DNA from: Laetmonice hystrix
Lineage: Eukaryota
Direction: 5' to 3'
Assembly (NCBI GenBank): GCA_965235115.1
Contig: OZ249441.1
Location: 1,860,001 to 1,924,000 of the forward strand
DNA: 64,000 nucleotides
The notes beneath the pieces were generated by a model. The model saw nothing but the letters and a program-made list of their open reading frames with translations, was not told the DNA's origin and made no database searches. Numbering within the stretch: position 1 is the first letter of the stretch; each line of letters begins with the position of its first letter. Positions 35,222 to 59,713 of the stretch are shown piece by piece. Both the position numbers and the translations under genes were made by a program.

Positions 35222-36316
35222 ACAGTGGTCGCAGGTATGCCGACTGGTGACAGTGGTCGCAGGTATGCCGACTGGTGACAGTGGTCGCAGGTATGCCGAC
35301 TGGTGACAGTGGTCGCAGGTATGCCGACTGGTGACAGTGGTCGCAGGTATGCCGACTGGTGACAGTGGTCGCAGGTATGCCGACTGGTGACAGTGGTCCC
35401 AAGTATGCCGACTGGTGACAGTGGTCCCAAGTATGCCGACTGGTGACAGTGGTCGCAGGTATGCCGACTGGTGACAGTGGTCGCAGGTATGCCGACTGGT
35501 GACAGTGGTCGCAAGTATGCCGACTGGTGACAGTGGTCGCAGGTATGCCGACTGGTGACAGTGGTCGCAGGTATGCCGACTGGTGACAGTGGTCGCAAGT
35601 ATGCCGACTGGTGACAGTGGTCGCAGGTATGCCGACTGGTGACAGTGGTCGCAGGTATGCCGACTGGTGACAGTGGTCGCAGGTATGCCGACTGGTGACA
35701 GTGGTCGCAGGTATGCCGACTGGTGACAGTGGTCGCAGGTATGCCGACTGGTGACAGTGGTCGCAAGTATGCCGACTGGTGACAGTGGTCGCAGGTATGC
35801 CGACTGGTGACAGTGGTCGCAGGTATGCCGACTGGTGACAGTGGTCGCAAGTATGCCGACTGGTGACAGTGGTCGCAGGTATGCCGACTGGTGACAGTGG
35901 TCGCAGGTATGCCGACTGGTGACAGTGGTCGCAGGTATGCCGACTGGTGACAGTGGTCGCAGGTATGCCGACTGGTGACAGTGGTCGCAGGTATGCCGAC
36001 TGGTGACAGTGGTCGCAGGTATGCCGACTGGTGACAGTGGTCGCAGGTATGCCGACTGGTGACAATGGTCGCAGGTATGCCGACTGGTGACAGTGGTCGC
36101 AGGTATGCCGACTGGTGACAGTGGTCGCAGGTATGCCGACTGGTGACAATGGTCGCAGGTATGCCGACTGGTGACAGTGGTCGCAGGTATGCCGACTGGT
36201 GACAGTGGTCGCAGGTATGCCGACTGGTGACAGTGGTCGCAGGTATGCCGACTGGTGACAGTGGTCGCAGGTATGCCGACTGGTGACAATGGTCGCAGGT
36301 ATGCCGACTGGTGACG
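35222..36316. repeat. 28-bp minisatellite, ~39 copies
   Basis: Unit cagtggtcgcaggtatgccgactggtga. Confidence 0.95.
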
Positions 36317-36545
36317 CGGACTTCTTTCCACCGATTTACGACCTGAGACGCAATGATCTTTGCCAAGATCATAATTACGTGAAACTTATAACACGGCAAG
36401 CGGAAGGTGCTGCAAGTATCATCAGCCGCAAGACAATAGGAGTGCTCATCGAATCGAATGGATGAATTTCGTCTCAAACCATCGCTCTAATTCATTCCTA
36501 ACGTATGTCAATGATATCCTTTTTGTTTAATTGGTGAGAGTGAGC

Positions 36546-37157
36546 TAACTGTTGCCCATATCAGGTCAGGGATTTACTAACTGTTGCCCATATCAGGTCA
36601 GGGATTTACTAACTGTTGCCCATATCAGGTCAGGGATTTACTAACTGTTGCCCATATCAGGTCAGGGATTTACTAACTGTTGCCCATATCAGGTCAGGGA
36701 TTTACTAACTGTTGCCCATATCAGGTCAGGGATTTACTAACTGTTGCCCATATCAGGTCAGGGATTTACTAACTGTTGACCATATCAGGTCAGGGATTTA
36801 CTAACTGTTGCCCATATCAGGTCAGGGATTTACTAACTGTTGCCCATATCAGGTCAGGGATTTACTAACTGTTGCCCATATCAGGTCAGGGATTTACTAA
36901 CTGTTGCCCATATCAGGTCAGGGATTTACTAACTGTTGCCCATATCAGGTCAGGGATTTACTAACTGTTGCCCATATCAGGTCATGGATTTACTAACTGT
37001 TGCCCATATCAGGTCAGGGATTTACTAACTGTTGCCCATATCAGGTCAGGGATTTACTAACTGTTGCCCATATCTAGGTCAAGGATTTACTAACTGTTGC
37101 CCATATCAGGTCAGGGATTTACTAACTGTTGCCCATATCAGGTCAGGGATTTACTAG
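36546..37157. repeat. 32-bp minisatellite, ~19 copies
   Basis: Unit aactgttgcccatatcaggtcagggatttact. Confidence 0.95.
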
Positions 37158-37300
37158 GCCTTACCTTACACCAACATATAACCAACACTTGGATTTATTA
37201 ATTGAAGTCGACACCTTGCAATGAGATAATCAAGCCACTGGACCGCGTTTAATTGATTAGTAAGTCATGCCAGGCTTCCATTAATACGGACATCCTATTT

Positions 37301-38092
37301 ATACCCTCCACATATCTGACCTCTAAAACTGGTATACCCTCCACATATCTGACCTCTAAAACTGGTATACCCTCCACATATCTGACCTCTAAAACTGGTA
37401 TACCCTCCACATATCTGACCTCTAAAACTGGTATACCCTCCACATATCTGACCTCTAAAACTGGTATACCCTCCACATATCTGACCTCTAAAACTGGTAT
37501 ACCCTTCACATATCTGACCTCTAAAACTGGCATACCCTCCACATATCTGACCTCTAAAACTGGTATACCCTCCACATATCTGACCTCTAAAACTGGTATA
37601 CCCTCCACATATCTGACCTCTAAAACTGGTATACCCTCCCCATATCTGACCTCTAAAACTGGTATACCCTCCACATATCTGACCTCTAAAACTGGTATAC
37701 CCTCCACATATCTGACCTCTAAAACTGGTATACCCTCCACATATCTGACCTCTAAAACTGGTATACCCTCCACATATCTGACCTCTAAAACTGGTATACC
37801 CTCCACATATCTGACCTCTAAAACTGGTATACCCTCCACATATCTGACCTCTAAAACTGGTATACCCTCCACATATCTGACCTCTAAAACTGGTATACCC
37901 TCCACATATCTGACCTCTAAAACTGGTATACCCTCCACATATCTGACCTCTAAAACTGGTATACCCTTCACATATCTGACCTCTAAAACTGGCATACCCT
38001 CCACATATCTGACCTCTAAAACTGGTATACCCTCCACATATTGGACCTCTAAAACTGGTGTATCCTCCACATATCTGACCTCTAAAACTGGA
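37301..38092. repeat. 33-bp minisatellite, ~24 copies
   Basis: Unit ataccctccacatatctgacctctaaaactggt. Confidence 0.95.
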
Positions 38093-39245
38093 ACGTATAG
38101 CCTTGCGCAATTGCTAAAAACCATAGTATTCACCGGCAAAACTGCAATATACTACTAGGCCTACATATCGAGTTCTAAATGTACATATATGGGGTCTGAT
38201 ATTCATTGATTGCGCATGCCCTTCAAAAAGTGCCCAATTCCAACTACCTGACTAAACCTACTTATCTTGTAATCGGCGGTAAGTAAGAGAGCCAGGTCAA
38301 GTATCCGATCAAAGTGAAGACAAGTAAGGAGAGACGTAGACGAGGACATCGGAAAGGTTGCAGTGAGGCGCCGGGCCTCAGGCCGTTAATCCCACTCCGT
38401 GGAGCACTTAGGTGGCTACATTTACAAAGGCTTATCCCCTGTCAGGATTTCCCGTTTTCCCGGATCTTCATCACTGATTCAAATGTGAACTTTCGCTGTC
38501 GTAAACAAAAGTAACCTTCCTAATCTAATCAAATCTCTGATCCCTTACTGAATTCTCTTTAAAATAATAATAAAATCATAAAATAATATATTATTAAACG
38601 TCGGAGAACACGTCGAATAGGCCTATCATTGAATCAAAAACCTTATCGAATGATGGCATTAGCAAATAATACTAGATTGTTCGATAATAGGTACCCGAGG
38701 CTGGCCCAGCGAGGCCTACCTTGGTGCAATGACTAGAATTGGTGTGGTGTGGCCAACATTTTTATTTCGTTGTTTCCAAAGTGGCTTGCCTGACCCCCGC
38801 GAATTAACACTATGGTGTTGGGCATGGGTCTGTGGAATCAAAACCAAAACATTTTTATATAAATGAAGTAACTCTATTTACAAAATCCGTTTGCTCAACC
38901 GTGTATTGTATTTTACAATGACAAAAGTTCTTGATAAAGTTCTGAGGCACGTAATCGTTTCGCCTTTTTTCATACTCTCTAGACTCCACAACATTCCGTC
39001 AGGTAGGAGCCAGACATACAACCGTAGGGCACATTAAGGGTACTTGTGTAGGTCGTATAAAACACTTAACTCGTCATTAGTCAGGATGGTCAAACTTTTC
39101 TTACTCTAGGTGTCTATGTGACGCAGGTTTCATTCTTAGAGCTTGTACTCATAACCGGTCATAACCGGTCATAACCGGTCAGATCCGGTCATTTCATACC
39201 AAGGGTTCAAATAACGGGTAATCATAGACCAAGCGAACATGAATC

Positions 39246-40995
39246 TTATGTTTTGGAATTCGTCATCAAATGTGGTGCACATTTCCTTAGGCATTTAAGA
39301 GACGGGGGCCGAAGGTGTCTACACAGTTCAGTGTAGCACTGGCTGAATAAGAGTAGTGCCGACCTCTTTCTATCATAACCATAGTTCATGGGGTCCACCC
39401 AGCGTTTGTCTCGGTTTTTGAGCTCTGATTTGCAGTTAGCGCAGTCCGTGTTTCCGAGGTTTCCACAGAAGACGTCGTCGCATCCGTTTCCAAGCGTTCG
39501 GACAACTTCCGGTTTGACGTGATCGGATTCGGTTTCGCCCACCAGATCCGACTTGGATTTAAAGTCTGATAGGTCTCCATCGAGCCAAGGTTTCGCGAGT
39601 GCCCGTTTCCCCTTCGCGAATTGGGACGCGTCTAGCCAACGTTTGTTTGCGTTCTCGTTGTTTCCCGTTGTTTCTTTAATGCGTTCCTGGCCGTTTTCGT
39701 TGTCGTTAACTTGTTCGTCGTCTGCGTTGTCTTCATTGGACTGATAATGGTCGATCAAGCGTTTCTCATTATGTCCGCGGTCGGTGGCGCTGACGTCTTT
39801 GCCATGACGTCCATAGTGTGACGGATCTAACCAGCGTTTGGAGGTCACCATGTCATTGTCCCCGTCAGAATCATCACCGAACGCTGCTTCTCGATCGTCT
39901 CGTTTGAAATGTAACGAATCCAGCCAACGTTTTTCATTCAGGAGTTGATGGTCGCCCACCCAGACTTTCTCGGGTTCACCATTGAGAGGGACTACCGATT
40001 TCTTATCGAACTGGGATGAGTCTATCCATTTCTTATCATTGAAATGAGAGGAATCTATCCATTTCTTATCCAGGTGGGATGCTCCGAATCTTTTCTTGTT
40101 TTTGAAATGGGAGGAGTCGAGCCATCGTTTGTCAAAATGTGAAGAATCAATCCATTTTTTATCGAACTGAGAAGAATCAATCCATTTCTTATTGAATTGA
40201 GAAGAATCGATCCACTTCTTATCGAACTGAGAAGAATCAATCCATTTTTTATCGAACTGGGAAGAATCAATCCATTTTTTATCGAACTGGGAAGAATCAA
40301 TCCATTTTTTATCGAACTGGGAAGAATCAATCCATTTTTTATCGAACTGGGAAGAATCAATCCATTTTTTATCGAACTGGGAAGAATCAATCCATTTTTT
40401 ATCAATCTGGCGGTTTGGATTTAACAGCTTACCGTTCTTCACGTCTTTAGCATCAAGCCACTTTTTTTCATTGTAATGTGAGGCATCTAGCCATCGTTTG
40501 TCAAAATGCGATGCGTCAAGCCATTTCTTATCATTGTAATGGGCAGAATCTCTCCATTTCTTTTGGAATTGAGTTGCGTCGACCCATCTTTTGTTAAAAT
40601 GGGACGAATCCAACTTCTTGTCAAATTGAGAGGAGTCAATCCACTTCTTTCCGAACTGGGACGAATCAATCCACCTTTTACGAAACTGGGATGAATCAAT
40701 CCACTTTTTACGAAACTGGGATGAATCAATCCACTTTTTGCCAAATTGAGAGGAGTCAATCCATTTTTTCCCAAACTGGGAGGAATCAATCCATCTTTTG
40801 CCGAACTGGGATGAGTCAATCCACTTCTTGAACAGGCCACCCTCTCGAGGAGAACTAGTCCATGCCTTAATTAACTTCAAGTTGCCGGATCGACATGACC
40901 TGAGCACGCAGAGAACACGTGCATAGCCTTCCTTCCCGACCGGGCATTGTTGGCGTGCACACTCATGGAACTGACCGGCTGGCCTGGCGTTGGAC
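39246..40995 (-). CDS. Multi-copy neuropeptide precursor, main (last) coding exon; WIDSSQF/WLD-type peptides
   Basis: Acceptor ttgtctctgtctattcag|G at 40996/40995, with an open frame to TAA at 39246. About 30 peptides are flanked by KK/KR/RKR, some with Gly amidation donors, separated by acidic spacers, with Cys modules. Many synonymous differences among identical peptide copies indicate coding constraint. Confidence 0.9.
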
Positions 40996-41783
40996 CTGAA
41001 TAGACAGAGACAACGTGTAAACTTATTAGACAGGATTCCGTTAACACCTTCTGTCGGTGTCTGCAGTGATTGTAACACAGCTTTGTCGTAATCCTTACGA
41101 TCGACAAATACAAACGACGTACAAAGGCTGCCACCACCTTGCCATTAGACTTTTCATGGAATATTTAACATGTTTCGAATCGATACATATTTTCAAAACG
41201 TTAAAACCAGTTGTTTTAATGAGGCTAGATCCCTCTATATTTCGCAAGTTTTAGTAACGGAGAACTGCGGTTTGTACATGGAAAACAGCTCGTCTCTTGT
41301 CATGGCGAGCATTATGATAAGGGCACCGCGGGCGCTAAACCTCATTCATGGCTATTTGCCTCCAAATGAGCTCATCTGAAGGAAGCTGGCCGCGTAATGG
41401 CTGCCTCCATTGCGAGACCTTTCAACTCATAACTTTTGATGGGGGTGAATGGGTACCTGTAATTTACTTCTAACAAGAGTTATATTGTTAGCGGTTTAAA
41501 GAGACAGTTTACCATTCGAGAGAGAAATGCTGCCGATTTCAAGGACGTAAGATTTGATGAGTGAGAGATAGATTCTAGTAGGCTATATCTCCGCGATAAT
41601 TCGGCACCAGTAAATAGTCGAGAGGCTGGGTATATCTTTCGTTCTTCTAATTCGTTTCATCTGATCCCCAATTCGCATGACATATGAGACGATCATTACT
41701 TATCAAAACTTTGTGGTTAAAGTTTACTTGTACCAGAGTAAGCCACTATTCCCTTTTAACATCCTGAAGGCGAAATCTGTGAC

Positions 41784-42424
41784 GTCGAGGGCCATAAAGT
41801 ACATCAGATCTGTAAACACCATCTCTATATACAATAACATTAGACAGATGTCTATGGGTTAAGTGATACGTCGAGGGCCATACAGTACATTTGTAAACAC
41901 CATCTCTATATACAATAACATTAGACAGATGTCTATGGGTTAAGTGATACGTCGAGGGCCATACAGTACATTTGTAAACACCATCTCTATATACAATAAC
42001 ATTAGACAGATGTCTATGGGTTAAGTGATACGTCGAGGGCCATACAGTACATTTGTAAACACCATCTCTATATACAATAACATTAGACAGATGTCTATGG
42101 GTTAAGTGATACGTCGAGGGCCATACAGTACATTTGTAAACACCATCTCTATATACAATAACATTAGACAGATGTCTATGGGTTAAGTGATACGTCGAGG
42201 GCCATAAAGTACATGTGTAAACACCATCTCTATATACAATAACATTAGGCAGATGTCTATGGGTTAAGTGATACGTCGAGGGCCATACAGTACATCTGTA
42301 AACACCATCTCTATATACAATAACATTAGGCAGATGTCTATGGGTTAAGTGATACGTCGAGGGCCATACAGTACATTTGTAAACACCATCTGTACACAAA
42401 ACATTAGGCAGATGTCTATGGGTT
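41784..42424. repeat. 81-bp minisatellite, ~8 copies
   Basis: Unit gtcgagggccatacagtacatttgtaaacaccatctctatatacaataacattagacagatgtctatgggttaagtgatac. Confidence 0.92.
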
Positions 42425-45400
42425 AAAGGAAGCTTATTAACGACCGCCCTAACAATGCTAACGCGGTCATGGCGGTCGTTCTCGGTTCTCAGTCCATTGA
42501 GATGAAAAATATGGGATGTATCGCCTCATTATGGCTCATAATCAACAACAGACCGAACACAACAATGTTATGGATACGACAGAATGTTTTATCAGTCCAG
42601 TGAGATAGATTCAAGATCAGGTAAGCTTGAAATACGCGGATTCGTAGGAGATGGGGACAAAACTCGGCGGCCGCGTATAGGTGATCGGTTACCTTTAAGT
42701 GATCATAAGACAAGAGGTTTCCTTCTCATTCTCTCGGCAGGTACCGGGAATGTACCGGGAATGTACCGGGAATGACGAAGACGCTGTTCGGAAATGGACA
42801 TCATTACGATACGGGAAGGAAGCCGGATGTAGACTGAAATCACCCGCGTGGAAACGGCCGGCCACGTACCGACATCGACCATCTCCTAACACATTTACCA
42901 CAGTATACGTGGACACTTAGCCTTTATAATACCGTGTACGAGGAGCTGGATTCATTCTTCAATTTGTACTGGCTACTCTTCCCACTGAGGAATCCTTATA
43001 CCACAACACCTTGATCAGTTTATTCGAGATGGGTGAGATTGTTCATATTACAATATTTAGAGGCCATGTATTTTGTTATACTAACATGTTACAATATTTA
43101 GAGGCCGTATATTTTGTTATACTAACAGGTCTGACTAGCATTATAATCCCTCTCCAAGCTTCCCTAGAACATGCATGCTGATCATAAACCGTTAAATATA
43201 TTTCATGCCGGCAGAAGTGCATGCATTCGGAATTTAAAGCGCCATATTACTTCGATAGTTCACAATCATGTGCCACTCTTGTCCCAGGCATTACAATACC
43301 ATTTTTGACAACATTAAGCCGTATGAATTCTCATAATGTCTTTAAATCTTAGCAGCAGAACACCACTCCGATCTAATCATTTCTCCACACACAGAAGATC
43401 AACCCCCCGGCGGTAATGTAAACTCCTATCCTTTACATCAGCACTGTATTAATTTAATCAGTGGATAATTAATCGTATAAAAGAATAGGAACAATTGAAG
43501 CTGGCACACATGTGTAAGTAGTAGCTGATGTTGCTGCCACATATGTTCAATAACTTCGGTTAAGTACGATATAGGAAAATCATGGCTGGCGTTTTGGCGC
43601 TCGGGAAAAAAAGTCAGAGTTTAACGAAACTTTCCTGCTAAGTAATATCAGAACAACAAAAACACCATCTGAGTGACTTTAGTTCAAACAATCTGTGATA
43701 ATTCCATGAGGTAACATTAACGGCTGTCGTCATTTGAGACGGATTAATATTTTCGTCTGATTCCTGACGTTTGAGTTCCACCTCTTTAATCAATGATCTG
43801 AGACGAAACATTTCGTGTGACGCTGGCACAACAGATCAGCGAGCAGCTGGTGGGCCTTTACAAACTATCGCACAGCCCAACATGAATACGTTCACATTTT
43901 GTGGACAGGATTTGTGACAAAGACTTCAGAGGCTTCCTGCTTAACAACCATGTATAGTAGTGGAGATAATTCAACTGCACAATAAAAAAAGGGATTGAAA
44001 GGCATATTGACATTCGCCGCATGCTTTGTACTCTAAGGTCGTTCGTAAAACGGAATCTTTCCAAATTATGGTAAATCATATCGAATATCCGACGTCGTAA
44101 GGAAGGCGCGCTCCGGTTTAAAAGATCTCTTTCTTCACAATGACGTTCCCCTTGTATAGCGAGACTTTATTAGGCAGTTAGTACACCTTGTGGTTATTTA
44201 CTGCTATTGACAACCACATTTCAGTGTATTAGATACTGATATGACCGATGATTAGGTTTCTAACAGGCATGTTATTCAATCACGCCGGCTTCCACTGAAC
44301 GTAATGAATGTTTTCTCTGTCAATTCTGGATTTGGTCAGCGAGTTGAAGGGTCAATGACAAGCTTGTGTCTTGACGCTCCAGTTTTGATGGCTGTGGAGC
44401 TGTCGCGCACTGATGACAAGAGCGTTTTTATGAGCACAACCTTTGACAGCCAGAAAATGAAATCATTCATAAGAATAATCGTAAAATTCTCAATGGGCAC
44501 TTTATACATTGTTACGGGTGAACATTACAGAGAATAACATCCTTCCTCGTGCAATATTGACCTTTGTTTAAAAGTGGGTAAACTTCCCTTTGTACATTTT
44601 ACACATCGCTGACAGCGCAGGAGTATTTGGGTGTTTCCTTCCTGTTCTAACTCTTACCATCTGCCATTTCGCAAGCTTTTGCCAATAAAGATACTCCATA
44701 CACCATTGGGTTTTGTAGCCTTATTGTGACGGAGGCTATTGTTCATGAGACATCCCTGTGACGAGAAACAGTGAATTTGGATGGCGATGAGTCATCGATT
44801 GGTTCCGGGCTTCCGCGACATATGTGCTTATATACAGATGAACTCCACGTGCATGGAATTCGTTTTGCTGTCATGATAATAACGTCTACATGTGGCTCGC
44901 TATAATTCAATTAATACAAACAACTTCTGTGAAACATATCGGTAAGTTTCTTAACAAAAATATGCCTGCGTGAATGGCTCGATTTTCTCCGTATAGGACA
45001 TAATCATCTTCATCGTCGTGTCTTGCTTTCCTTTTCGAAGTAACGTTATAAAACAAGTGCAACTTTTTGTCGCGACAAAAATGTTGATTACACTTGCGTG
45101 ATGAGGTATAAAATTATCATTTTCATGTTACAAATCGGATTGGCTTAACGTAAGTTATTTCGTGGGAGCGAGCCGAGACCCACATACACAAGGCGCCAAG
45201 TGACTTCGTTTGGTGACTATGACAGGGATTCATTGTGTTAGAAAAGTATCTTTTACTGTTGTTCTAACCGTCTGCACCTCTGAAGCCAGATGTGTAATGG
45301 CAAAGATAGTACTTCATTCAGGTAAGCAGGTCATGGTGTTTGAAATACCGGCTACTAACATCTCAAACAAACCTCAGCCCACGAACAGTGACCATCCATG

Positions 45401-46654
45401 TATACCAACCTGATGATAGGCAGCGTACGGAAACAGCTGGCGTTAAACAAACCGGACATTGTGGCCTGTAACACGCTCAACCACTACTCGTCCCCGTCTG
45501 TGGTCGTAAAGAGATATCATCAAGTTGTAGAAACCATTAGGATTTCCATAATTTCCTATCAAGAATTAGGAAACCTTACACACGCTCACACAATCAGCCG
45601 TTGGCGGCGATGGTCACCACTTCGTACCCAGCCTCGCTCTCACACTCACGCAACCCGCCACTCTCTGTATCCATGGCAATCAAATATTTGCTGTGGAATC
45701 GGATCCTTCCCCTGGGATTAGTGTCTGATCAATTGAGGGGGTTCTCACCAACGCTACAATTATTGCCGTGAAATCCTTGCCAAATGAAAACAACTATGCA
45801 TAGTTTGGCTGTACAGGTCCTTTGGTTTGTACAAATTTTCCTGACGATTCTATCTTTGTGACCTCACTGGACAGGTTGAAAAAACGAGTTTATCCTGTTG
45901 GTTGATAGAGCTGTTCGTGGTGTTCGGCAACGTTCTGCCCAGCGGATCGGTCATTTCAGCCGTTAAACGCGAACAAAATTACCGTCACAATGCCCTAATT
46001 ATGTGAGGTGTGACCATTCACCTGTACGACCCTTATCAACGGTGCAGTTTAATAAAGGTTGAAAGCATGCTAACGTGAACCCGTCGTTAGGCTGAACGGA
46101 TAACGTCATTACATGACAACTTCACCATGGCAACAACACAGACGCGCTGAGGAACGCTATTACTTCCGGTTGTGGAGAGGTATAGCTTTGTTAAAATGTG
46201 CCTGTGGACGGCCCTGAGAGACGACCGAAATATAATGACGAACGCTCAGTTTAGATTTACTCCTGATGTGATAATTAATATCAACTGAATTATATGCCGC
46301 CAGGGATGGAAATGAAGGTCGTCTGTAATTATCTAGCCGTGCACTTCTCGCGAGATAACGTCTTAACCAACACTGCAGATTGCAACGTAAAGTGCACGTT
46401 ATAATAACATACATGGTGGTTTGAATCTTGTGAACATTTCTGTGAGAGGGAATCAGTGTCTCCTCAGTTTCACACGACAGTCGAACAGCCTGGAACAGTT
46501 TGTAATCATCACCTCATCAATCTGGTCTGAGTGGGTGAAACCGACTTGTTCTCGCCCTGAATGTGACCAACCATTACCGACAGGTCGTGAACAACCCATC
46601 AACTTCACCACTACCACGCTCTTCTTGTCGCGAATGTTTCAAGAACCAGACCGT

Positions 46655-47200
46655 ATGATGCTAAGTACAGAAGAACTACATAGGCAATATGGTATACAAT
46701 ATCTTGATGTCAGACGAAATCAACACCTCCTGTATCACATGTATAGATGTTCAAACAACCCACTGTTGCTCAAGGACGGCACACAAGGCATCCAATCACG
46801 TGCCAGTAAAAAGATCAGATTTGAAATCGACAGACCAAAAAAAGCACTGTACTTCCGTTGCCCAATGTACAGAGGAACAAAAGCCTGGGACAACCTCTCT
46901 ATAGAAACGCAAACTGCAGTATCCCTACCGTATTTCAAGCGTAACATACGGACTAATACTTAATCCAACTCATATAGTCCGTGTCATCATGTACCTATAT
47001 ATATACGTGTAATAAGTGAAACTGTGTATATATACACCTAGGTATCTATGATACAGCATAAGGGTGACGATACTAAGCAAGGCAAATGTATTCATCATTA
47101 CACTAACATGTTTCTTACACGTTAATGATTCATATGTTGATGTATACCAGCAGTGAAAATCATATGTAAAGTGTGACTGCTGAAGACCTAATAAAAAAAA
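46655..47200 (+). mobile_element. 5'-truncated non-LTR retrotransposon (LINE ORF2 C-terminus, 3' UTR and A tail)
   Basis: STEELHRQYGIQYLDVRRNQHLLYHMY...RASKKIRF...PMYRGTKAWDNLSIETQTAVSLPYFKRNI resembles the post-RT C-terminal region of CR1/L2-like LINEs; it ends in aataaaaaaaa at ~47190-47200. Confidence 0.6.
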
Positions 47201-47296
47201 CAGAGAACGGAGGAGAGCGGATAAGAGAGTGATACTCTTAATTTGGTTTTGATTACAGCGATAATATTTTCTCTCATTATTTAATTATCATTGGAG

Positions 47297-47420
47297 GCCT
47301 TTCGTTTTCAAGCTGCACACGGATGCACCTTTCGTTTTCAAGCTGCACAAGGATGCACCTTTCGTTTTCAAGCTGCACAAGGATGCACCTTTCGTTTTCA
47401 AGCTGCACAAGGATGCACCT
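47297..47420. repeat. 30-bp tandem repeat x4
   Basis: gcacctttcgttttcaagctgcacaaggat. Confidence 0.85.
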
Positions 47421-48011
47421 CGCGTTTCCGTTTGGAGTACTTTCATTAAGTGCATAACATGGGTCCTTGAGGACAAAACTATTCTATTCCTAATATTCAT
47501 TTCTAAAGAGCTTGCAAATTATTTATTTCATTTTCCATTTTTGACATCCCGTCATATTTCACCTAGGCCTAAGATCAACTAGCATGATCTTATCAATGAA
47601 CCCCATCGTTGTCATAGTGATCCATGTATACGTCACCATTAAATATTATCTCTTTCTTGGCGGACAGACCTCTGGCGTTCTTTAGCAGAGAGATACTTTA
47701 TTCCCAACTGACCCTTTAATTTTAAATGCCGCCTGTTTACTCTACCTCCGTCAAGAACACAGTTCTGTGACTTCTTGACCGCACACTGCTGTGTATTAAA
47801 GTTTAGCCATTACTGTGCCTGGCGCCTCATGCCGCTCGCCATCCGGTACTGCTGTGAGAAAAGTACTTTGCGAGAAATCTCCATGCCTCGGAACTACCGG
47901 GGCCGGATCCCCAGACCATTACTCCATCCAACTTCTTTTCCTGGATCCGATGATAAGGGGAGAGCATTGAAGCCGGCCACGGTCACAATGGGCAAGGTGG
48001 CAATGGTAGAC

Positions 48012-48056
48012 CTCCTCCTCCTCCTCCTCCTCCTCCTCCTCCTCCTCCTCCTCCTC
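48012..48056. repeat. (CCT)n microsatellite
   Basis: Direct inspection. Confidence 0.9.
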
Positions 48057-51000
48057 TGCCACCGCCGCTCAGACCAATTTCCACCAACGGCAGACATTCG
48101 CGACCTCCCAATCCCTGTAGGCGTTGGTCGATGGCCATCCCGAATAGAACTGTTTTAAGGCGTGCCACTTGCTGCATTAACAAACATTCCGGGTACACAG
48201 GCATGACTCCCCTGGCGGGAGAATGTCGCATACTCCTGCCCCAGGTTACACCAATCTCTGTCTGTTATTGACAAGGTTTCAGGATGAGGCGTACATGTCT
48301 TCTACAGGTATGAGGAAGGAATGTTGTCGCTAGAACGTCATCAACCTGACCAATATTTACTATCTCTGTCTGAGTTCGAAGTCGAGAGGTCATTATACAA
48401 TTGCTCCCGAGTGCCCTCTAATTTACCGTAATGCAGACGCCGTTGTGCTTACAGAACGCATATTAACGTACCTTTTCATTGCCGAAATTGGAAATTTTCA
48501 TTGGCATTGGATTGTGTTGGCGTTTCTGTCTATAATTACTGCAGAATGGATTAACCAGGTCACCTGTGCCAGTGCCAGTCAATATATACAGGGCGTATGT
48601 AAATATCACGTTAACAAAAGCCGAGAAAATAATCACAACTCTGTGGTTTGTTATGATTATTACTTTCGTAAGTCTGTACTGATATAATACGATACGTGGT
48701 CGGATGTTTTGTTCACGTCGAGTCTGTGTAAATACAGTATTTCTGATACAAAACCGGGCACGCCCTGTTTTGCGTGCATGCATGGAAGGCCCAATGAAAA
48801 ACCTTGTCTCCCGATTACTTGCGGGCTGCGTCGACCTTGAGGATAAGGGGGGAGCGTCTCCGACTTTCTTCTTCTCGACTTCTAATGGCCCCCTTCCCCC
48901 TATCTTATGTCCTACTAAAAGTTTATTGCAAACTCTCCAATATGATGTGACACAGCCAAGTGACTCGAGTTAGGTCAGAGTAGTGATGGTGATTACAACA
49001 ATATGACATTTACATCTACCTGCCTTTCTAATACACGAGACTTGAACGAAGAACATTGTTATACGCCTGCATAAGAAACATTGCAATGTCAAAAATTCAG
49101 TTGGTGTAATTGTTACTTTGTATGTACTGTCACGTCGTGTCAAATATTATTCTCACTCTATAATACAGCCGCCACTCTAATTATCATCGGTTTAAATGTC
49201 GAATAAATAGAATTTACAGGACAGAATGTTGTACTTCTCATTCTATCTACTCGTCGTCGTACAGAGTCGGTTCAAATGTTCACAGCAAGTAAATACTTAA
49301 TATGATATGGCTGAGTGGCATGCGTGAAAACAACAAAAATGCGAGCGAGCGATTTAGAGAAGAAAACTTTGGACAGAACAAATAACTTACTGGTTTAAAA
49401 AGGTCGTACCACTCGATCAAAACGTTTTGATCTACGCGTGCATGTGCCTGCAAGTCCAAGAAAACCTCATTCCGACCAGTAAACTGATGGCTAGAAGTCA
49501 AACAGACCCACCTTACAGATGAACTCATAAAGCAGTGAGTGAGCACACCTGACGGTGCTATACGTCATGCTATGGACCTACGCGTTTTTGTCAACTCCCT
49601 AAAAAAGGGGTTTCAATGTAAGCAAACACACCACACGTTACACGCCACGCCACGCGTCAAAATCTGAAGCATCAGGTATGTTCCCAACCCTTAAGTATAT
49701 TTATCCTGAAGATGAAGTTGTTTTTCTTCATGGACTATTCCGTCGTTTGTGGCATTATTTTAGCTTTGACTACTAGAGTCTATGATAAAATAATGATCGA
49801 AAACTAACAGAATTTCTTTACAAATAGGATATTAAATGGTAAGATATTTAGCACATGCTCATTATGATAGTTATATACAGGATGTAAACAAAGGAAAAAC
49901 TGCCATAAAACATTGATGACGGTCCCCTCAGGGTTTCTTTAACCGCCCGAATATCTCCTGGCATGCAGATGACGTTGACGACGACTCGATTTGGCAGGAG
50001 GACCCTAACGTAATCAAAGGCACTACGACGCCGCACAAGTATCATGGACACCCGCACAACTCGGCCATTTATTGGCTGAGTTGTCAACCGACGACGTTTG
50101 TTCGAAATGACACGCCTACGCGTCTGCTCCGTCAGAGGAACTTCGCAGTGAATTATGTATTCCTCTCTGCTAATTGCGTCGGGATTTAGAATGAAATGAT
50201 TGCTGTTGGCAACTTATGTTTCATTGACGACAGCGTCATCATTTGGAGGACGTGAGTGATGGTTACGTTAAGGGAAGGCTTGCGAGAGACAGTCGTCGTA
50301 ATATGCTACCGGATTGCATGCCTGCGTAAGGTCGGAACTGGCAGCTGCAAAAACTTGAAATGTAAATTACTTTAAATGTCTAAATTATAATACTGTAAAG
50401 GGTAAAAGGTATAGCAAACGCATGAGCGTATAGAATACAGCCTCATACTGTAAGGGCCGCCCCACCATCAGTAGAAGATGGCATGTAAGATAGCGTTACC
50501 TTACTGCAGCTGGTTTTATAGTAATGCCAGCTTCATACTTGTAATAATGTTTTTCGGCCACGCGGCGTTTGCTTTGCGTATTTAATGTATACAACTTGAT
50601 GACGTCGCACGCCCGTTTGTTACGTCAGCAAACAGCGCTGCGGCGTTATGGCGCCATGCTCTGTACACTGCGACAAAGATGTAATGTCATGTATATGCAG
50701 TTATTCATCATCTTTTGGTTGTACATTGCAGTTGGCGACATGGTTAGGAATGGCCTGAGTTGGCACAAAGTCACCTCAAACGTCTACAATCAATTAGTAT
50801 GCCCTTGATCAGTTCCTATAATCCCCAATTATTTAATATTTTTGGCCTCCCGGGAAGGCCAGCCGAATGAGCGCAGACATCCTGACACGCACAATAGTCC
50901 GTCTATAGATCTACTCGTAGGTGGCGAGTCTATTTGCGGCAGTGCTGCATCGGGCCGGCGCCATTCTTCGCGGCAACACCGCAACTTTACCGCCATTACG

Positions 51001-53049
51001 GCCAACTTGTGGAGCTCATCCAGCTTATCGCGCCAATTTTCTAAAATGCACGCTCATATAAATCGTACGGGAACCCGGGTAATGCGCAGGGGTGCATTGA
51101 TAATGAGGACACCGCTTGCTAAACTGGGCCTGCTTCTTTTGATCCCAAGACAAACACACCCAGCATACGTTTAACGGTAAAGAAATATCACTACATGCTT
51201 GACGCACCTGTTCGATAACAGCAACCATTTTACAAACCGGTGTAGTAATCTAATGAGTGAGGTGGCGCGCATGCGCATATCTGGGCTGTGAGAGTTCTTT
51301 CTCCGGACGGTTCGAACAATGCCGATGATTGCCGAAAGGACCCGGGCGTAAGAATCGGCAAGAGTTCGATGGTGTCGCTCAGACAGGGTTGGATTTTGTA
51401 CGGACTGTTGATGACGTGACCATCACATGACCAAAGGTAGCGCTATGATTGGTTGCGCAGAAAGAGTGATTGCGACTTACACCGCCAGCATACGTCACAT
51501 TGTCGGTTCACGTGATCCACGGGAGCGGTACGTCGACCTGCCATTCAAACATGGTTGATTTTGCCGCAAGGCCCTTCGCAGTGGCAGTAGCGCTGAAATG
51601 GCGTGGCGGCAAAGTTTGCTTGTCACCGTATTGCCGCAAAACTTGATCCACAGCCGCGGTGGCACAAGCCGGGGAATGGCCGTGACGTCACCAAATGAGC
51701 GATCATGAGTCATTCGGGATTCCCTCGGCCATATCTTCGAAAGTAGCCTCGGGTGAAATAGGCGCCATTTTGAGCATTGCATCGCGGGTACATTTAGCCG
51801 GGACTCTCGACAGCATGGCAGTGCTTGCAGTATTTTGTCTGCATCAGGCCTACAGTGCTTTCCCCGAAGTCAGTGGGCAATATTACGATAGTATCATGTT
51901 CACGATACAACTTAAATTACAAGTAGTCCTACCATGTGTAGTCCAGTTGTCGTGGGCGCGGCCATATTGCTTCCCATAATTTCATAAATTACCGTATTGA
52001 CGCCCATTTAGGTAAATTAGGTGATTAATTTTTCTTCGTCAAACGTTTCCCTTCATACCAGAAATTTATATTTGCACATACAACGCCGACGGAGCAGGTG
52101 TCAATAATGTACTACTTCCTGGCTCGATGAGATATGACGGTTCACTCAGTGCCTCACTACACACCTCCATTTGGCCATGTATCCGGTTGCCAAACATGGC
52201 CGCTAATCCACCCGAGGGTATATTCGAATAGCAGGAAGTGACGTCATATGCCCGAGGGAGTCCCGAATGATAATGAGTGTTAGGTATAACGGTTAGGTTT
52301 AGCATCTTTTATCGCTCATTTTTATGACGTCACGACCATTTCCTGGCATGAGCCGCAGCAGTGACATAGTTGGGACGGAGCGGCGGTGAAACCGCAACTT
52401 TGCCGAAGTGCTACCGCAAGTGGTTCGCCCTATTAATTGTTTATGCTGAGCAAGATGGCAAGCGTTATTTTATACCCGACCGAGTGGAGGATATTAAAAA
52501 CTTAATTTCCGTGAATAAAAAGATAAAGAGGCAGACAGAAGACACAGAGTCAATCAAAGACCTTTGATTTGAAACTCTTGTATCTTTGTCAATCTCGTCT
52601 CGTCTCCTTCCTGGGTAGGATAATGACAAATACACAATTTCACAACGTGCATGCAATGGCTCTTTAAAACATCTCCCGCTGTGGCGTAGAGGATTGACTT
52701 CTAACTTCGACTTCGGCAATTGTTTTTTTTAACGCCAAGTAGGCCTACAGACACTGGCAGCCATTATCGTGATGATGATCCAACCTCATCTCATGAATAC
52801 CATATAGACGAGAGACAGGGCTAGACAGAAAATGTTCACTTTCATGTTATGACAAGCTGGCTACTCGGACGTCGTCAAACTACGAACGAATGTCGACGCA
52901 CGTAACGCGCTTCGCCTGCCACCTGACGAACTGAAAGTTTTCATCTCTGGGAACGTGTTTGGTGGGGGGGGGGGGGCAGAGACACTATGACTCGGCACCA
53001 TAAAGGAAGATGAACAACCATGCTGTACTCGATATTTTATAACTTGTAA

Positions 53050-53348
53050 TCAGTGGCAAGGCTGGGCTTGGGGCCCGCGGCTGTCTCGGCAACTAGTGGC
53101 AAGGCTGGGTTTGGGGTCCGCGGCTGTCTCGGCAACTAGTGGCAAGGCTGGGTTTGGGGTCCGCGGCTGTCTCGGCAACTAGTGGCAAGGCTGGGCTTGG
53201 GGTCCGCGGCTGTCTCGGCAACTAGTGGCAAGGCTGGGCTTGGGGCCCGCGGCTGTCTCGGCAACTAGTGGCAAGGCTGGGCATGGGGCCCGCGGCTGTC
53301 TCGGCAACTAGTGGCAAGGCTGGGCTTGGGGCCCGCGGCTGTCTCGGC
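53050..53348. repeat. 43-bp GC-rich minisatellite, ~7 copies
   Basis: Unit tagtggcaaggctgggcttggggcccgcggctgtctcggcaac. Confidence 0.92.
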
Positions 53349-54448
53349 TTCGCAACCTCACCCCTTCCCCGCACATTATAACGGGGCGTGGTAAATTCAG
53401 TAGTTTCAATGTTAGCAGGAACGTTATAATTAACATTAACACATGTTCATGCGCTCCCTGGATGTTATCCCCTGTAGCACCTGCCATACAACAAGAATTG
53501 AACTGATATCACTCGCTCGGAACAATTTCTGTTCCCTTTGCCGGGAATCGCTACTCCTGTTAACCTCGACTTTCACCTGGGTGGTGTCGTCCACTTCCGT
53601 CCATTCTCCTGATTGTCGCCGCCGCATCCCAAGCTACGACTGCCTTCCCATGAAGGCAATATCTTCACATTAAACGAAGAAAGAATTGATTTTCTCTTTG
53701 AGGTGCAAACCATGTAGTGGTTTATGGCCTTACAATGGCCGAGTGGTACAGCCAATGTGCGGGAGGCAGGGTGCCCTCGGGGTGAGACCGCCTACGATAA
53801 GGACCTTGGCTGCGCTATCTTCACACCCCTCTGGGTTTGAAAGCACCCCTCTCGGAGTCTGGCGCCGTACAAGGAGTGTACTCATGACATGGTCTCAGGC
53901 CTAGTTCAGCCGAGGCAAAGTCTGTGTGAATGCCATGTCTCCGAGCAAAGTCTTCGCCTCCCACTCGCACAACTCGGGGAGAGTCACTTCGATCACCGAG
54001 CCGAGTATAATTCGATGAAAGAGATCCATGGCTTCGCAAGGGAAGCCACCAAAAGAAACTCCTTTTTATACTTCAACGGAAGCATTGTTTTCTCAGATAA
54101 TATCGGACAAAGTTTTAGTATACAAGAGCGATATCGATAATTCTGCATAAAGTCCCGAAACTTCTGCCTATAGTGACTACATCAGGGCCTCTCAACCTCA
54201 AGGTTCCATTCGGAGTTATGTGAGAACGTTTGTTAATTATTTGCTGCAAGTTTGCAATGCATAAAAGACCAGTTCGATATGACTCTAACGGTTGCTAAGC
54301 GAAACAGTGCTAAACAATTATTTCCAATGATGGGCTCCCTTGACTGTTCTGTTCAATTTTTATTTATTTATTTATTTATTTTTGTCAGCTACTCCAATAC
54401 AGCCACATTTAACAGTTGTATAGAAACTGTATAGAATAAAGTACTCAC

Positions 54449-54491
54449 TCGGTTGGCGTTGGTTCTGTGGGTTGGGGGCTTGCCGTTGGGA
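54449..54491 (-). CDS. Neuropeptide precursor coding exon 2 (LPTASPQPTEPTPT-E)
   Basis: Acceptor tctttgttgcag and donor GTGAGT; 43 nt, phase 1 in and phase 2 out, matching the phase-2 acceptor at 40995. The joined CDS is 1845 nt (614 aa). Confidence 0.7.
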
Positions 54492-54642
54492 CTGCAACAA
54501 AGATCCACACCAATAAATAACATCTCCCTCCCTGGTGAAATCAAAGCTAGGCCTACAGTTGAAGCTTCACAGCTTTCAACGGGGATTTGGAAACGATCTA
54601 ACTACAACGTGATTCACTTGTAACGTAAAAGATGTTACTTAC

Positions 54643-54694
54643 GCGTTAAAGCATAGATGCAGACGAAAAGTTCCAGAAGTTTGTGGTGGTACAT
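54643..54694 (-). CDS. Neuropeptide precursor coding exon 1 (signal peptide MYHHKLLELFVCIYALT)
   Basis: gccATG context and a hydrophobic N-terminus; 52 nt ending in phase 1 at a perfect GTAAGT donor (54642). Confidence 0.72.
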
Positions 54695-55793
54695 GGCAGA
54701 GCCGGTTTCGGTTTGGACTTGGCGGCTGTCGTGGCGTGTAGTGAGGGCCGCGCCAGTCAGTTGATGAGGTGAGCAGTTTAGAACTGCTGTCCACCTTGCT
54801 CCACGCTCTGCACCACTAGTGTCCGACGGCGCAGGGAGACATGGACATGTTGCCGAGAGACATCTCCAGCTTCTCGAACTCTGACGTAAGGATCTTTTCG
54901 ACGTGCGCAGCTGGTTTAAACGCTAGAGGGACTGCACGGGGGACTTTTGAGTAAAACAGGGCCGTTACCAGGTCCTTATCATTCCCCGACGACACACTGT
55001 CGATTAAATCAGTCAGACAACAATTAATGACAAGCCATCTACCGCGTAGATATGTTCCCGTTGTGGGCGTCTTACTTCGGACGTCATGCCCACGTGACAC
55101 CCAACAAGCGTTCCCTTTACCTGCGCACGCATTGTTATGCGCCGACTATGGTCGAATCAGCGCAGGGGTGACGCTTTCAGCGCCAGTTGGCCCCACCCTG
55201 ATGAGGCCCTATGTCACGGGGGCGTCTAAAGCATCTTCAGATGCCACGTCGAATGTCATTGCCAATGTCAGTCGCGAAAGTCTTGCTCTGTAAGGATTAT
55301 TCTGCCTTTATTACTTTTGTACTATAATTACAGAGCGGGAAAAGGTCAGAAGGACCAGGCTCCGATGAAAGGAAGCACGATATGCCTTTAAAGGATTAGG
55401 ATGTTTGTCGGTATGTTCTTATTATCAGACTTTTTCTCCCTCCCACTTTGATCCGTGGTCTGTCTAGACTGATCTCTGAGATACTATTTCAAAAAGAAGT
55501 GCAAACATCCGTCATCGCCTAAAGACAGGATAATACAATAACACAGTAAGAGTATGCCATCCGTTTACAACTCAAATTATTAAAACAATGGACAACAATA
55601 TGACACAACTTCTGCTGTCATTGCCAGCTTGTTGTCAAAGAGACCTCAGATCAGTTACAACTTTACATCGTTTTTAATTTATTCAACTTAACTCAAGCAA
55701 AATTTAAAATTGGCTGTAGACCTATATAATAGTCATTGTTACGGTTGTGAGGCACCCGGGAGGAAATAACATAGGATTGGAAGAGAGAGGGAG

Positions 55794-55902: not shown

Positions 55903-56035
55903 NNNNNNNNNNNNNNNNNNNNNNNNNNNNNNNNNNNNNNNNNNNNNNNNNNNNNNNNNNNNNNNNNNNNNNNNNNNNNNNNNNNNNNNNNNNNNNNNNN
56001 NNNNNNNNNNNNNNNNNNNNNNNNNNNNNNNNNNN
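55903..56035. other. Assembly gap (N run)
   Basis: 133 Ns. Confidence 0.98.
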
Positions 56036-59422: not shown

Positions 59423-59713
59423 NNNNNNNNNNNNNNNNNNNNNNNNNNNNNNNNNNNNNNNNNNNNNNNNNNNNNNNNNNNNNNNNNNNNNNNNNNNNNN
59501 NNNNNNNNNNNNNNNNNNNNNNNNNNNNNNNNNNNNNNNNNNNNNNNNNNNNNNNNNNNNNNNNNNNTCTCTCTCACTNNNNNNNNNNNNNNNNNNNNNN
59601 NNNNNNNNNNNNNNNNNNNNNNNNNNNNNNNNNNNNNNNNNNNNNNNNNNNNNNNNNNNNNNNNNNNNNNNNNNNNNNNNNNNNNNNNNNNNNNNNNNNN
59701 NNNNNNNNNNNNN
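59423..59713. other. Assembly gaps (two N runs, 59423-59567 and 59579-59713)
   Basis: Ns flanked by CT repeats. Confidence 0.97.

What the first reader, a model, noticed from the sequence alone, without database searches (positions are those of the whole stretch)
54449..54694. Missing signal peptide found in two small exons 13.4 kb upstream
Seen: the ORF-track N-terminus (MLQSLQTPTEG...) is not a signal peptide and runs through a clear acceptor at 40996. Two exons, 54694-54643 (GTAAGT donor) and 54491-54449 (GTGAGT donor), splice in phases 1 and 2 to that acceptor. They give MYHHKLLELFVCIYALTLPTASP-QPTEPTPTESNARPAGQFHEC..., 614 aa in total. Inference: cleavage near ASP|Q would give a pyroglutamyl N-terminus. 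Ab initio annotation would probably miss this gene structure.
Basis: partly seen in the sequence, partly recalled or inferred. Interest (0 to 1): 0.7.

Follow-up and report, generated by a model that had tools for sequence, protein, structure and literature searches.

The report
Likely signal-peptide exons of WLD gene
Two tiny exons 13.4 kb upstream are the only good candidate for the missing start and secretion signal of an annelid WLD neuropeptide gene, but no RNA data could be found to prove they are used, and this gene layout is ordinary.

Summary
Exon 1 (54694-54643, ATG, GTAAGT donor), exon 2 (54491-54449, ttgttgcag acceptor, GTGAGT donor) and the big exon (40995-39246) join in frame to 614 aa without a stop.

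The big exon has no in-frame ATG before its acceptor, so upstream coding exons are required. The gene is the annelid WLD neuropeptide precursor, already noted by this scan on the same window.

The candidate N-terminus is as hydrophobic as the signal peptides of Platynereis WLD and another WLD relative. It puts the first conserved Cys at residue 44, against 45 in Platynereis.

It is the only in-phase ATG-plus-hydrophobic solution on this strand in about 53 kb upstream. The region is single copy, and the ATG is the first one for 147 nt.

An equally good solution arises by chance in about 10% of simulated 23-kb sequences, and about 0.3 times per 23 kb of real DNA.

All three public runs that hold the locus are DNA, so splicing was not tested.

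The proposed ASP|Q cleavage and pyroglutamate break the (-3,-1) rule, because Pro sits at -1. ALT|LP after residue 17 fits better.

Verdict: a probable (about 0.65) but unproven gene-model refinement of low general interest.

The parts
54643..54694 (-). Proposed coding exon 1. The ATG is at 54694. It encodes MYHHKLLELFVCIYALT plus the first base of Leu18, i.e. the n- and h-regions of the putative signal peptide. The donor is GTAAGT at 54642-54637.
   Evidence: There is no other ATG in the 147 nt upstream. The nearest in-frame stop is at 54925. There is a purine (G) at -3.
54492..54642 (-). Proposed intron 1, 151 nt, GTAAGT...ttgttgcag, phase 1.
54449..54491 (-). Proposed coding exon 2, 43 nt. 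It encodes (L)PTASPQPTEPTPT plus two bases of Glu32. It is needed to restore the frame between exon 1 (phase 1) and exon 3 (phase 2). The donor is GTGAGT at 54448-54443.
40996..54448 (-). Proposed intron 2, 13,453 nt, phase 2. It holds tandem arrays (81 bp x 7.9 at 41782-42426; 43 bp x 6.9 at 53052-53348). It also holds interspersed repeats with many genomic copies (about 46632-47200 at 99% identity; about 51711-52270 at 87-94%). No ORF in it has a Pfam match.
39246..40995 (-). Large 3' coding exon of the WLD-type neuropeptide precursor. It runs from the acceptor tctctgtctattcag|G to the stop codon at 39246-39248. It carries the N-terminal four-Cys motif, about 28 W-[IL]-D-x-S-[QH]-[FY] copies between dibasic sites, and a C-terminal KRWVDPMNYGYDRKRS plus four-Cys module.
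54695..55100 (-). Putative 5'UTR and promoter region (inferred only). CRE half-sites lie at 54886 (TTACGTCA) and 55086 (ATGACGTC). E-boxes lie at 55096 (CACGTG) and 54913. There is a TAATTG at 55026. There is no TATA box.
   Evidence: These are motif matches only, not evidence of function.

Best explanation
The two small minus-strand exons at 54694-54643 and 54491-54449 are the true 5' coding exons of the single-copy WLD-type neuropeptide precursor gene, whose large exon lies at 40995-39246.

Exon 1 supplies the start codon and the hydrophobic core of a cleavable secretory signal peptide. Exon 2 supplies a short Pro/Thr-rich linker and restores the reading frame. A 13.5-kb phase-2 intron padded with repeats separates them from the peptide-coding exon.

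The 614-aa preproprotein would enter the ER. It would lose its signal peptide, most likely after Thr17 (ALT|LP) rather than at ASP|Q. It would then be cut at KK/KR sites into about 28 WIDSSQF-type peptides.

Shown: the frame arithmetic, the need for upstream exons, the uniqueness of the candidate and its signal-peptide-like composition. Inferred: that the exons are actually transcribed and spliced this way, and where the signal peptide is cleaved.
For: 1. In-frame join of canonical GTRAGT donors and Y-rich CAG acceptors, 614 aa with no stop.
2. Exon 3 has no in-frame ATG upstream of its acceptor. A neuropeptide precursor needs a signal peptide.
3. The homologue P0001 has an acceptor in the same phase just before the same Cys motif, and no signal-peptide exon within 4.1 kb. 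A distant 5' exon therefore looks like a family trait.
4. Under loose criteria, the only ATG + hydrophobic + in-phase solutions in 40996-64000 use exon 1 at 54694. No competitor of comparable quality appeared in the next 30 kb, where a divergent rhodopsin-type GPCR gene starts at about 83 kb.
5. Only 5 GTRAGT donors exist on this strand in 23 kb, and two of them are these, 194 nt apart.
6. The hydrophobic maximum is 2.38, against 2.27 for the SignalP-positive Platynereis WLD signal peptide. Met to the first conserved Cys is 44 aa, against 45 aa in Platynereis.
7. The region is single copy and not a repeat. The ATG is the first one for 147 nt, with G at -3.
Against: - There is no transcript evidence at all. 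The only public runs holding the locus are genomic. They lie on the stretch as single unbroken contigs with no joints.
- No closely related sequence was found to test conservation of the exons.
- The chance rate is not negligible: 10% per 23 kb in simulations and about 0.3 loci per 23 kb in real DNA, with thresholds chosen post hoc.
- The h-region contains a Glu (LLELFVCIYALTL) and the n-region has only one Lys.
- A second in-frame exon-2 option exists (53775-53577).
- None of the 15 SNPs and 2 indels among the three runs' contigs falls in the 95 coding bases. That absence is expected about half the time by chance.
Confidence: 0.65

Rival explanations
1. Chance match. The real 5' exon or exons lie elsewhere. 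They may have weaker splice sites, a less hydrophobic or non-ATG-proximal layout that my filters missed, or a position more than 53 kb upstream. The 54694/54491 pair is then untranscribed DNA that happens to fit.
For: - Equal-quality solutions arise in 10% of Markov simulations, and at 4 other places in 291 kb of real sequence.
- The thresholds were set after seeing the candidate.
- There is no RNA support.
- There is a Glu inside the hydrophobic core.
Against: - No alternative candidate of comparable quality was found between 40996 and about 94 kb on this strand.
- A divergent GPCR gene bounds the locus at about 83 kb.
- The candidate also matches the Platynereis N-terminal length, and its ATG is the first one.
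Confidence: 0.25
2. Exon 1 is right but the middle of the model is wrong. Exon 1 would splice to another phase-compatible exon, for example 53775-53577 (199 nt, adding 66 aa). Alternatively, extra or alternative micro-exons exist.
For: - The 53775-53577 option also keeps the frame under loose splice criteria.
Against: - The 43-nt exon has the stronger sites (GTGAGT donor, ttgttgcag acceptor). It is the only option that passes the strict filter.
- It reproduces the Platynereis spacing to the first Cys.
- By eye, the 66-aa alternative has no recognisable coding character; this was not measured.
Confidence: 0.07
3. The locus is a decaying or non-secreted gene copy with no functional signal peptide at all.
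For: Only the absence of any transcript evidence.
Against: - A 1750-nt open exon with about 28 intact dibasic-flanked repeats and conserved Cys modules.
- It is the only WLD copy in the 627-Mb assembly.
- Its acceptor is strong and conserved in phase.
Confidence: 0.03

Closest known systems
Platynereis dumerilii WLD proneuropeptide (GenBank JF811332 / UniProt F8UKU1; Conzelmann et al. 2011 and 2013; sequence read in the supplement of PMC3890597)
   Same: - An N-terminal signal peptide, 21 aa in Platynereis by SignalP (VLT-QE).
- A four-Cys module about 45 residues from the Met.
- Many WLDxSQF-type copies between KK/KR sites.
- A C-terminal KKWVDPLNYGLDRKRS plus four-Cys module.
- The joined model here puts the first Cys at residue 44. 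It has a (-3,-1)-compatible site ending in ...LT, like Platynereis.
   Different: - The peptides here are mostly WIDSSQF, followed by D or G and then KK. Some could be amidated through the Gly.
- The N-terminal sequences are not alignable beyond the Cys pattern.
- The Platynereis record is a cDNA, so its exon structure could not be compared.
P0001 (575 aa, loci L001-L003; unnamed, from NCBI/ENA/Logan assemblies)
   Same: - 37% identical over the repeats, with both Cys modules.
- A phase-2 acceptor immediately before the first Cys motif.
- The called protein starts with intron read-through, like the ORF-track start here.
- No signal-peptide exon in the 4.1 kb of available upstream sequence.
   Different: - Its 5' exons are off the contigs, so it neither confirms nor refutes the exons proposed here.
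- Its acceptor lies 6 residues before the Glu-Cys (EC) that opens the first Cys module, rather than 10 as here.
P0005 (284 aa, Logan contigs of about 1.1 kb, L016/L017)
   Same: A WLDNSHY/WLDNSQF multi-copy precursor with a clear N-terminal signal peptide (MIDLLQSIFYGFIFCVAGLVEA). This shows that the family is secreted.
   Different: - It has no N-terminal Cys module.
- The signal peptide and the repeats lie on one short contig, so nothing can be said about its gene structure.

Membership tests
WLD neuropeptide precursor family (type: Platynereis JF811332) | Multiple W-[LIV]-D-x-[SMA]-[QH]-[FY] copies flanked by dibasic cleavage sites | tested here: met
   Translation of 39246-40995. Alignment to P0001. 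Platynereis sequence in the PMC3890597 supplement.
WLD neuropeptide precursor family (type: Platynereis JF811332) | Conserved C-terminal module K[KR]WVDPxNYGx[DE]RKRS followed by four Cys | tested here: met
   Here: KRWVDPMNYGYDRKRSALLLFSQCYTELC...KCLRKC. Platynereis: KKWVDPLNYGLDRKRSAYAKLSMCFHQHC...NCVQARC. P0001, P0008 and P0089 carry the same module.
WLD neuropeptide precursor family (type: Platynereis JF811332) | N-terminal cleavable signal peptide followed by a four-Cys module | tested here: inconclusive
   The Cys module is present in exon 3. A signal peptide exists only if the proposed exons are used. Its composition fits, but there is no transcript and no SignalP run.
Eukaryotic Sec-type signal peptide | Short n-region with positive charge, hydrophobic h-region of about 7-15 residues, c-region with small residues at -3 and -1 and no Pro from -3 to +1 | tested here: inconclusive
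The n-region is MYHHK, with one Lys. The h-region is LLELFVCIYALTL, with a 9-residue Kyte-Doolittle maximum of 2.38 but one Glu. The rule-compatible sites are IYA|LT and ALT|LP. This is a hand heuristic, not a trained predictor.
Canonical U2-type GT-AG introns | GT donor and AG acceptor with consensus context and compatible phases | tested here: met
   Donors CGC|GTAAGT and CGA|GTGAGT. Acceptors tctttgttgcag|T and tctctgtctattcag|G. Phases 1 and 2 sum to an open frame.
Canonical U2-type GT-AG introns | Junctions observed in RNA | not testable with these tools
   The look-up of sequencing runs returned three runs, none on record as RNA. All three lay on the stretch as single unbroken genomic contigs with no joints.

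The most novel reading that the evidence does not exclude
WLD-type precursor genes of annelids may generally carry their signal peptide on micro-exons many kilobases upstream, behind a conserved phase-2 intron. Gene callers would then routinely truncate them. This could help explain why WLD was listed in 2013 as having no orthologues outside Platynereis. The present locus would be the first WLD gene with a worked-out exon structure.
Probability: 0.35. Interest if true: 0.3.

Novelty: new member of a known kind. Interest (0 to 1): 0.22.

Why it matters
If the model is right, this genome's WLD neuropeptide gene has a complete, secretable 614-aa product. An annotator could use the model as it stands.

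It would also show that the family's 5' end sits behind a long, phase-conserved intron. That is useful when hunting WLD orthologues in other annelid assemblies.

It does not change what is known about neuropeptide biology. A signal peptide on a small separate exon is a common arrangement.

Tried and rejected
**RNA evidence**
- The look-up of sequencing runs on the big exon gave three runs of one sample, all holding it as DNA.
- Read laying on 53400-55700 showed one unbroken genomic contig per run, with no joints or loose ends.

**Transcript-derived proteins**
- The word-indexed search found only P0001.
- The exhaustive representative search found four true relatives (P0001, P0005, P0008, P0089). 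It found no fragment of this species' N-terminus.

**Related loci**
- The metagenome scan found none.
- The homologue's contigs stop 4.1 kb upstream of its acceptor and hold only microsatellite artefacts there.

**Alternative gene models**
- Single-exon signal-peptide solutions upstream of 40995: none is hydrophobic.
- Exon 1 spliced directly to exon 3 is out of frame (1+1 bases).
- Another gene inside the 13.5-kb interval: ten ORFs had no Pfam hit.
- Paralogues that could show the same 5' structure: the other genomic hits are unrelated low-identity repeats.

**Other checks**
- Polymorphism: no variant falls in the exons, but this is not significant.
- The Pfam hit of the repeat region to CfAFP is a low-complexity repeat artefact.

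Full report
**What is in the sequence**

On the minus strand an ATG at 54694 opens 52 coding bases (MYHHKLLELFVCIYALT plus one base) that end at a GTAAGT donor. After 151 nt, the acceptor tctttgttgcag precedes 43 bases (54491-54449) that end at a GTGAGT donor. At 40996 the sequence tctctgtctattcag precedes the large open exon.

Joining the three pieces gives 1845 nt, divisible by three. The product is 614 aa plus a stop and begins MYHHKLLELFVCIYALTLPTASPQPTEPTPTESNARPAGQFHEC. Intron 2 is 13,453 nt.

**Why upstream exons are needed**

The ORF-track start MLQSLQ... is a GTG under the bacterial code. The frame is open upstream only to 41144 and holds no Met there. The big exon therefore cannot start translation.

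The exon encodes a WLD-type neuropeptide precursor:
- about 28 W-[IL]-D-x-S-[QH]-[FY] units between KK/KR sites;
- an N-terminal four-Cys module;
- a C-terminal KRWVDPMNYGYDRKRS plus four-Cys module.

These match the Platynereis WLD precursor. I read its sequence and SignalP call in the supplement of PMC3890597 (signal peptide of 21 aa, cleavage VLT-QE). They also match the unnamed 575-aa homologue P0001. An earlier follow-up of this scan (s1-347136) reached the same identification. A secreted precursor must have a signal peptide.

**Independent support from the homologue**

In L001 the homologous exon starts at 4183, behind ttgattttcttggtgattgcag. This is the same phase (one base completes a codon), six residues before the Glu-Cys that opens the first Cys module. 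The protein called there also begins with intron read-through. No credible signal-peptide exon lies in the 4.1 kb of upstream sequence on that contig. A conserved phase-2 intron with a distant 5' exon thus looks like a feature of the gene family. The homologue cannot say where the exon is in this genome.

**How special is the candidate?**

Loose filters were: ATG, open frame, donor matching at least 7 of 9 consensus positions, Y-rich acceptor, final phase 2, and a 9-residue Kyte-Doolittle maximum of at least 2.2. Under these, the only solutions on the minus strand between 40996 and 64000 use exon 1 at 54694. Exon 2 is then either 54491-54449 or 53775-53577.

Strict filters required both donors to be GTRAGT and a hydrophobic maximum of at least 2.3. 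Under these:
- four other loci appear in 291 kb of real strand-bases;
- 10% of 300 third-order Markov simulations of the 23-kb region give at least one hit.

Only five GTRAGT donors exist on this strand in the 23 kb, and two of them are these.

I fetched 30 kb further upstream and found no competitor of comparable quality. A divergent rhodopsin-family GPCR gene starts at about window-coordinate 83 kb and probably bounds the locus.

Other points:
- The exon 1-2 region is single copy in the 627-Mb assembly, and so is the WLD gene.
- The long intron holds tandem arrays and interspersed repeats with many near-identical genomic copies.
- The intron has no ORF with a Pfam match.

The thresholds were set at the candidate's own values, so these chance figures are somewhat optimistic.

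**Is it a signal peptide?**

No trained predictor is available here. By composition the N-terminus has a short n-region (MYHHK) and a 13-residue hydrophobic stretch with one Glu. Nine-residue hydrophobic maxima:

| N-terminus | Maximum |
|---|---|
| This model | 2.38 |
| Platynereis WLD signal peptide (SignalP-positive) | 2.27 |
| P0005 | 2.91 |
| ORF-track read-through start | 1.01 |
| P0001 called start | 0.67 |

Met to the first conserved Cys is 44 residues here and 45 in Platynereis.

The ATG has G at -3. It is the first ATG for 147 nt and follows an in-frame stop at 54925. CRE half-sites and E-boxes lie within 400 nt upstream, with no TATA box. These are motif matches only.

**The cleavage inference**

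Under von Heijne's (-3,-1) rule (small residue at -1, small or aliphatic at -3, no Pro from -3 to +1), only IYA|LT and ALT|LP pass. ALT|LP resembles the Platynereis ...VLT|QE site and falls at the exon 1 boundary. The pyroglutamyl N-terminus is therefore not supported. It also matters little, because the bioactive peptides are excised further downstream.

**What could not be tested**

The only public runs that hold the locus are three runs of one sample. All lay on 53400-55700 as single unbroken genomic contigs, with no joints or loose ends. There is thus no evidence for or against splicing.

Their 15 SNPs and 2 indels all miss the 95 coding bases, but that is expected about half the time.

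The exhaustive protein search found only four true WLD relatives and no fragment of this species' N-terminus. P0005 comes from short contigs of about 1.1 kb and P0089 from short metagenome scaffolds. A metagenome scan found nothing.

**Verdict**

I consider the interpretation probably right (about 0.65), for these reasons:
- upstream exons must exist;
- this is the only good candidate in about 53 kb;
- it has the strongest splice consensus;
- it has first-ATG status;
- it has signal-peptide-like composition;
- it reproduces the Platynereis spacing.

It remains a prediction with a real chance-match rival (about 0.25) and a smaller 'right first exon, wrong middle' rival. It is a useful annotation fix for one gene of a known family, not a new kind of thing.

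Noticed in passing
window 36000-38100: Three back-to-back, nearly perfect tandem arrays lie just downstream of the WLD gene's 3' end. They are 28 bp x 11, 32 bp x 19 and 33 bp x 24, at 97-98% identity. They create long spurious ORFs on both strands.
   Followed up: no
window 46632-47200 and 51711-52270: Two interspersed repeats of about 570 bp lie inside the long intron. The first has at least 10 genomic copies at 98-99% identity, so it looks recently active and is SINE- or MITE-sized. The second has dozens of copies at 87-94%.
   Followed up: partly
L015 9144-9998 (+), i.e. G000:C6:1943144-1943998, about 19 kb beyond the window's high end: An open frame of 285 aa matches Pfam 7tm_1 (rhodopsin-family GPCR, E = 6e-18). 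It is transcribed divergently from the WLD gene and lies about 28 kb upstream of the proposed WLD start. This is a GPCR next to an orphan neuropeptide gene; no link was tested.
   Followed up: partly
P0005 (L016/L017), P0008, P0089 (L018/L019), P0001 (L001-L003): WLD-type precursors exist in several other public assemblies. The 2013 Platynereis catalogue (PMC3890597) listed WLD as having no orthologue outside Platynereis. P0005 has a clear signal peptide but lacks the N-terminal Cys module.
   Followed up: partly
window 40607-40830 versus 39998-40410: The first block of repeats mostly ends in Gly before the dibasic site (WIDSSQFGKK/GKR), which could give amidated peptides. The second block ends in Asp (WIDSSQFDKK). 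One precursor may therefore give two chemically different peptide sets.
   Followed up: no
window 55903-56035, 59423-59567, 59579-59713: Three runs of N (133, 145 and 135 bases) lie upstream of the proposed first exon. They were left as they are. Any exon hidden there could not be seen.
   Followed up: no
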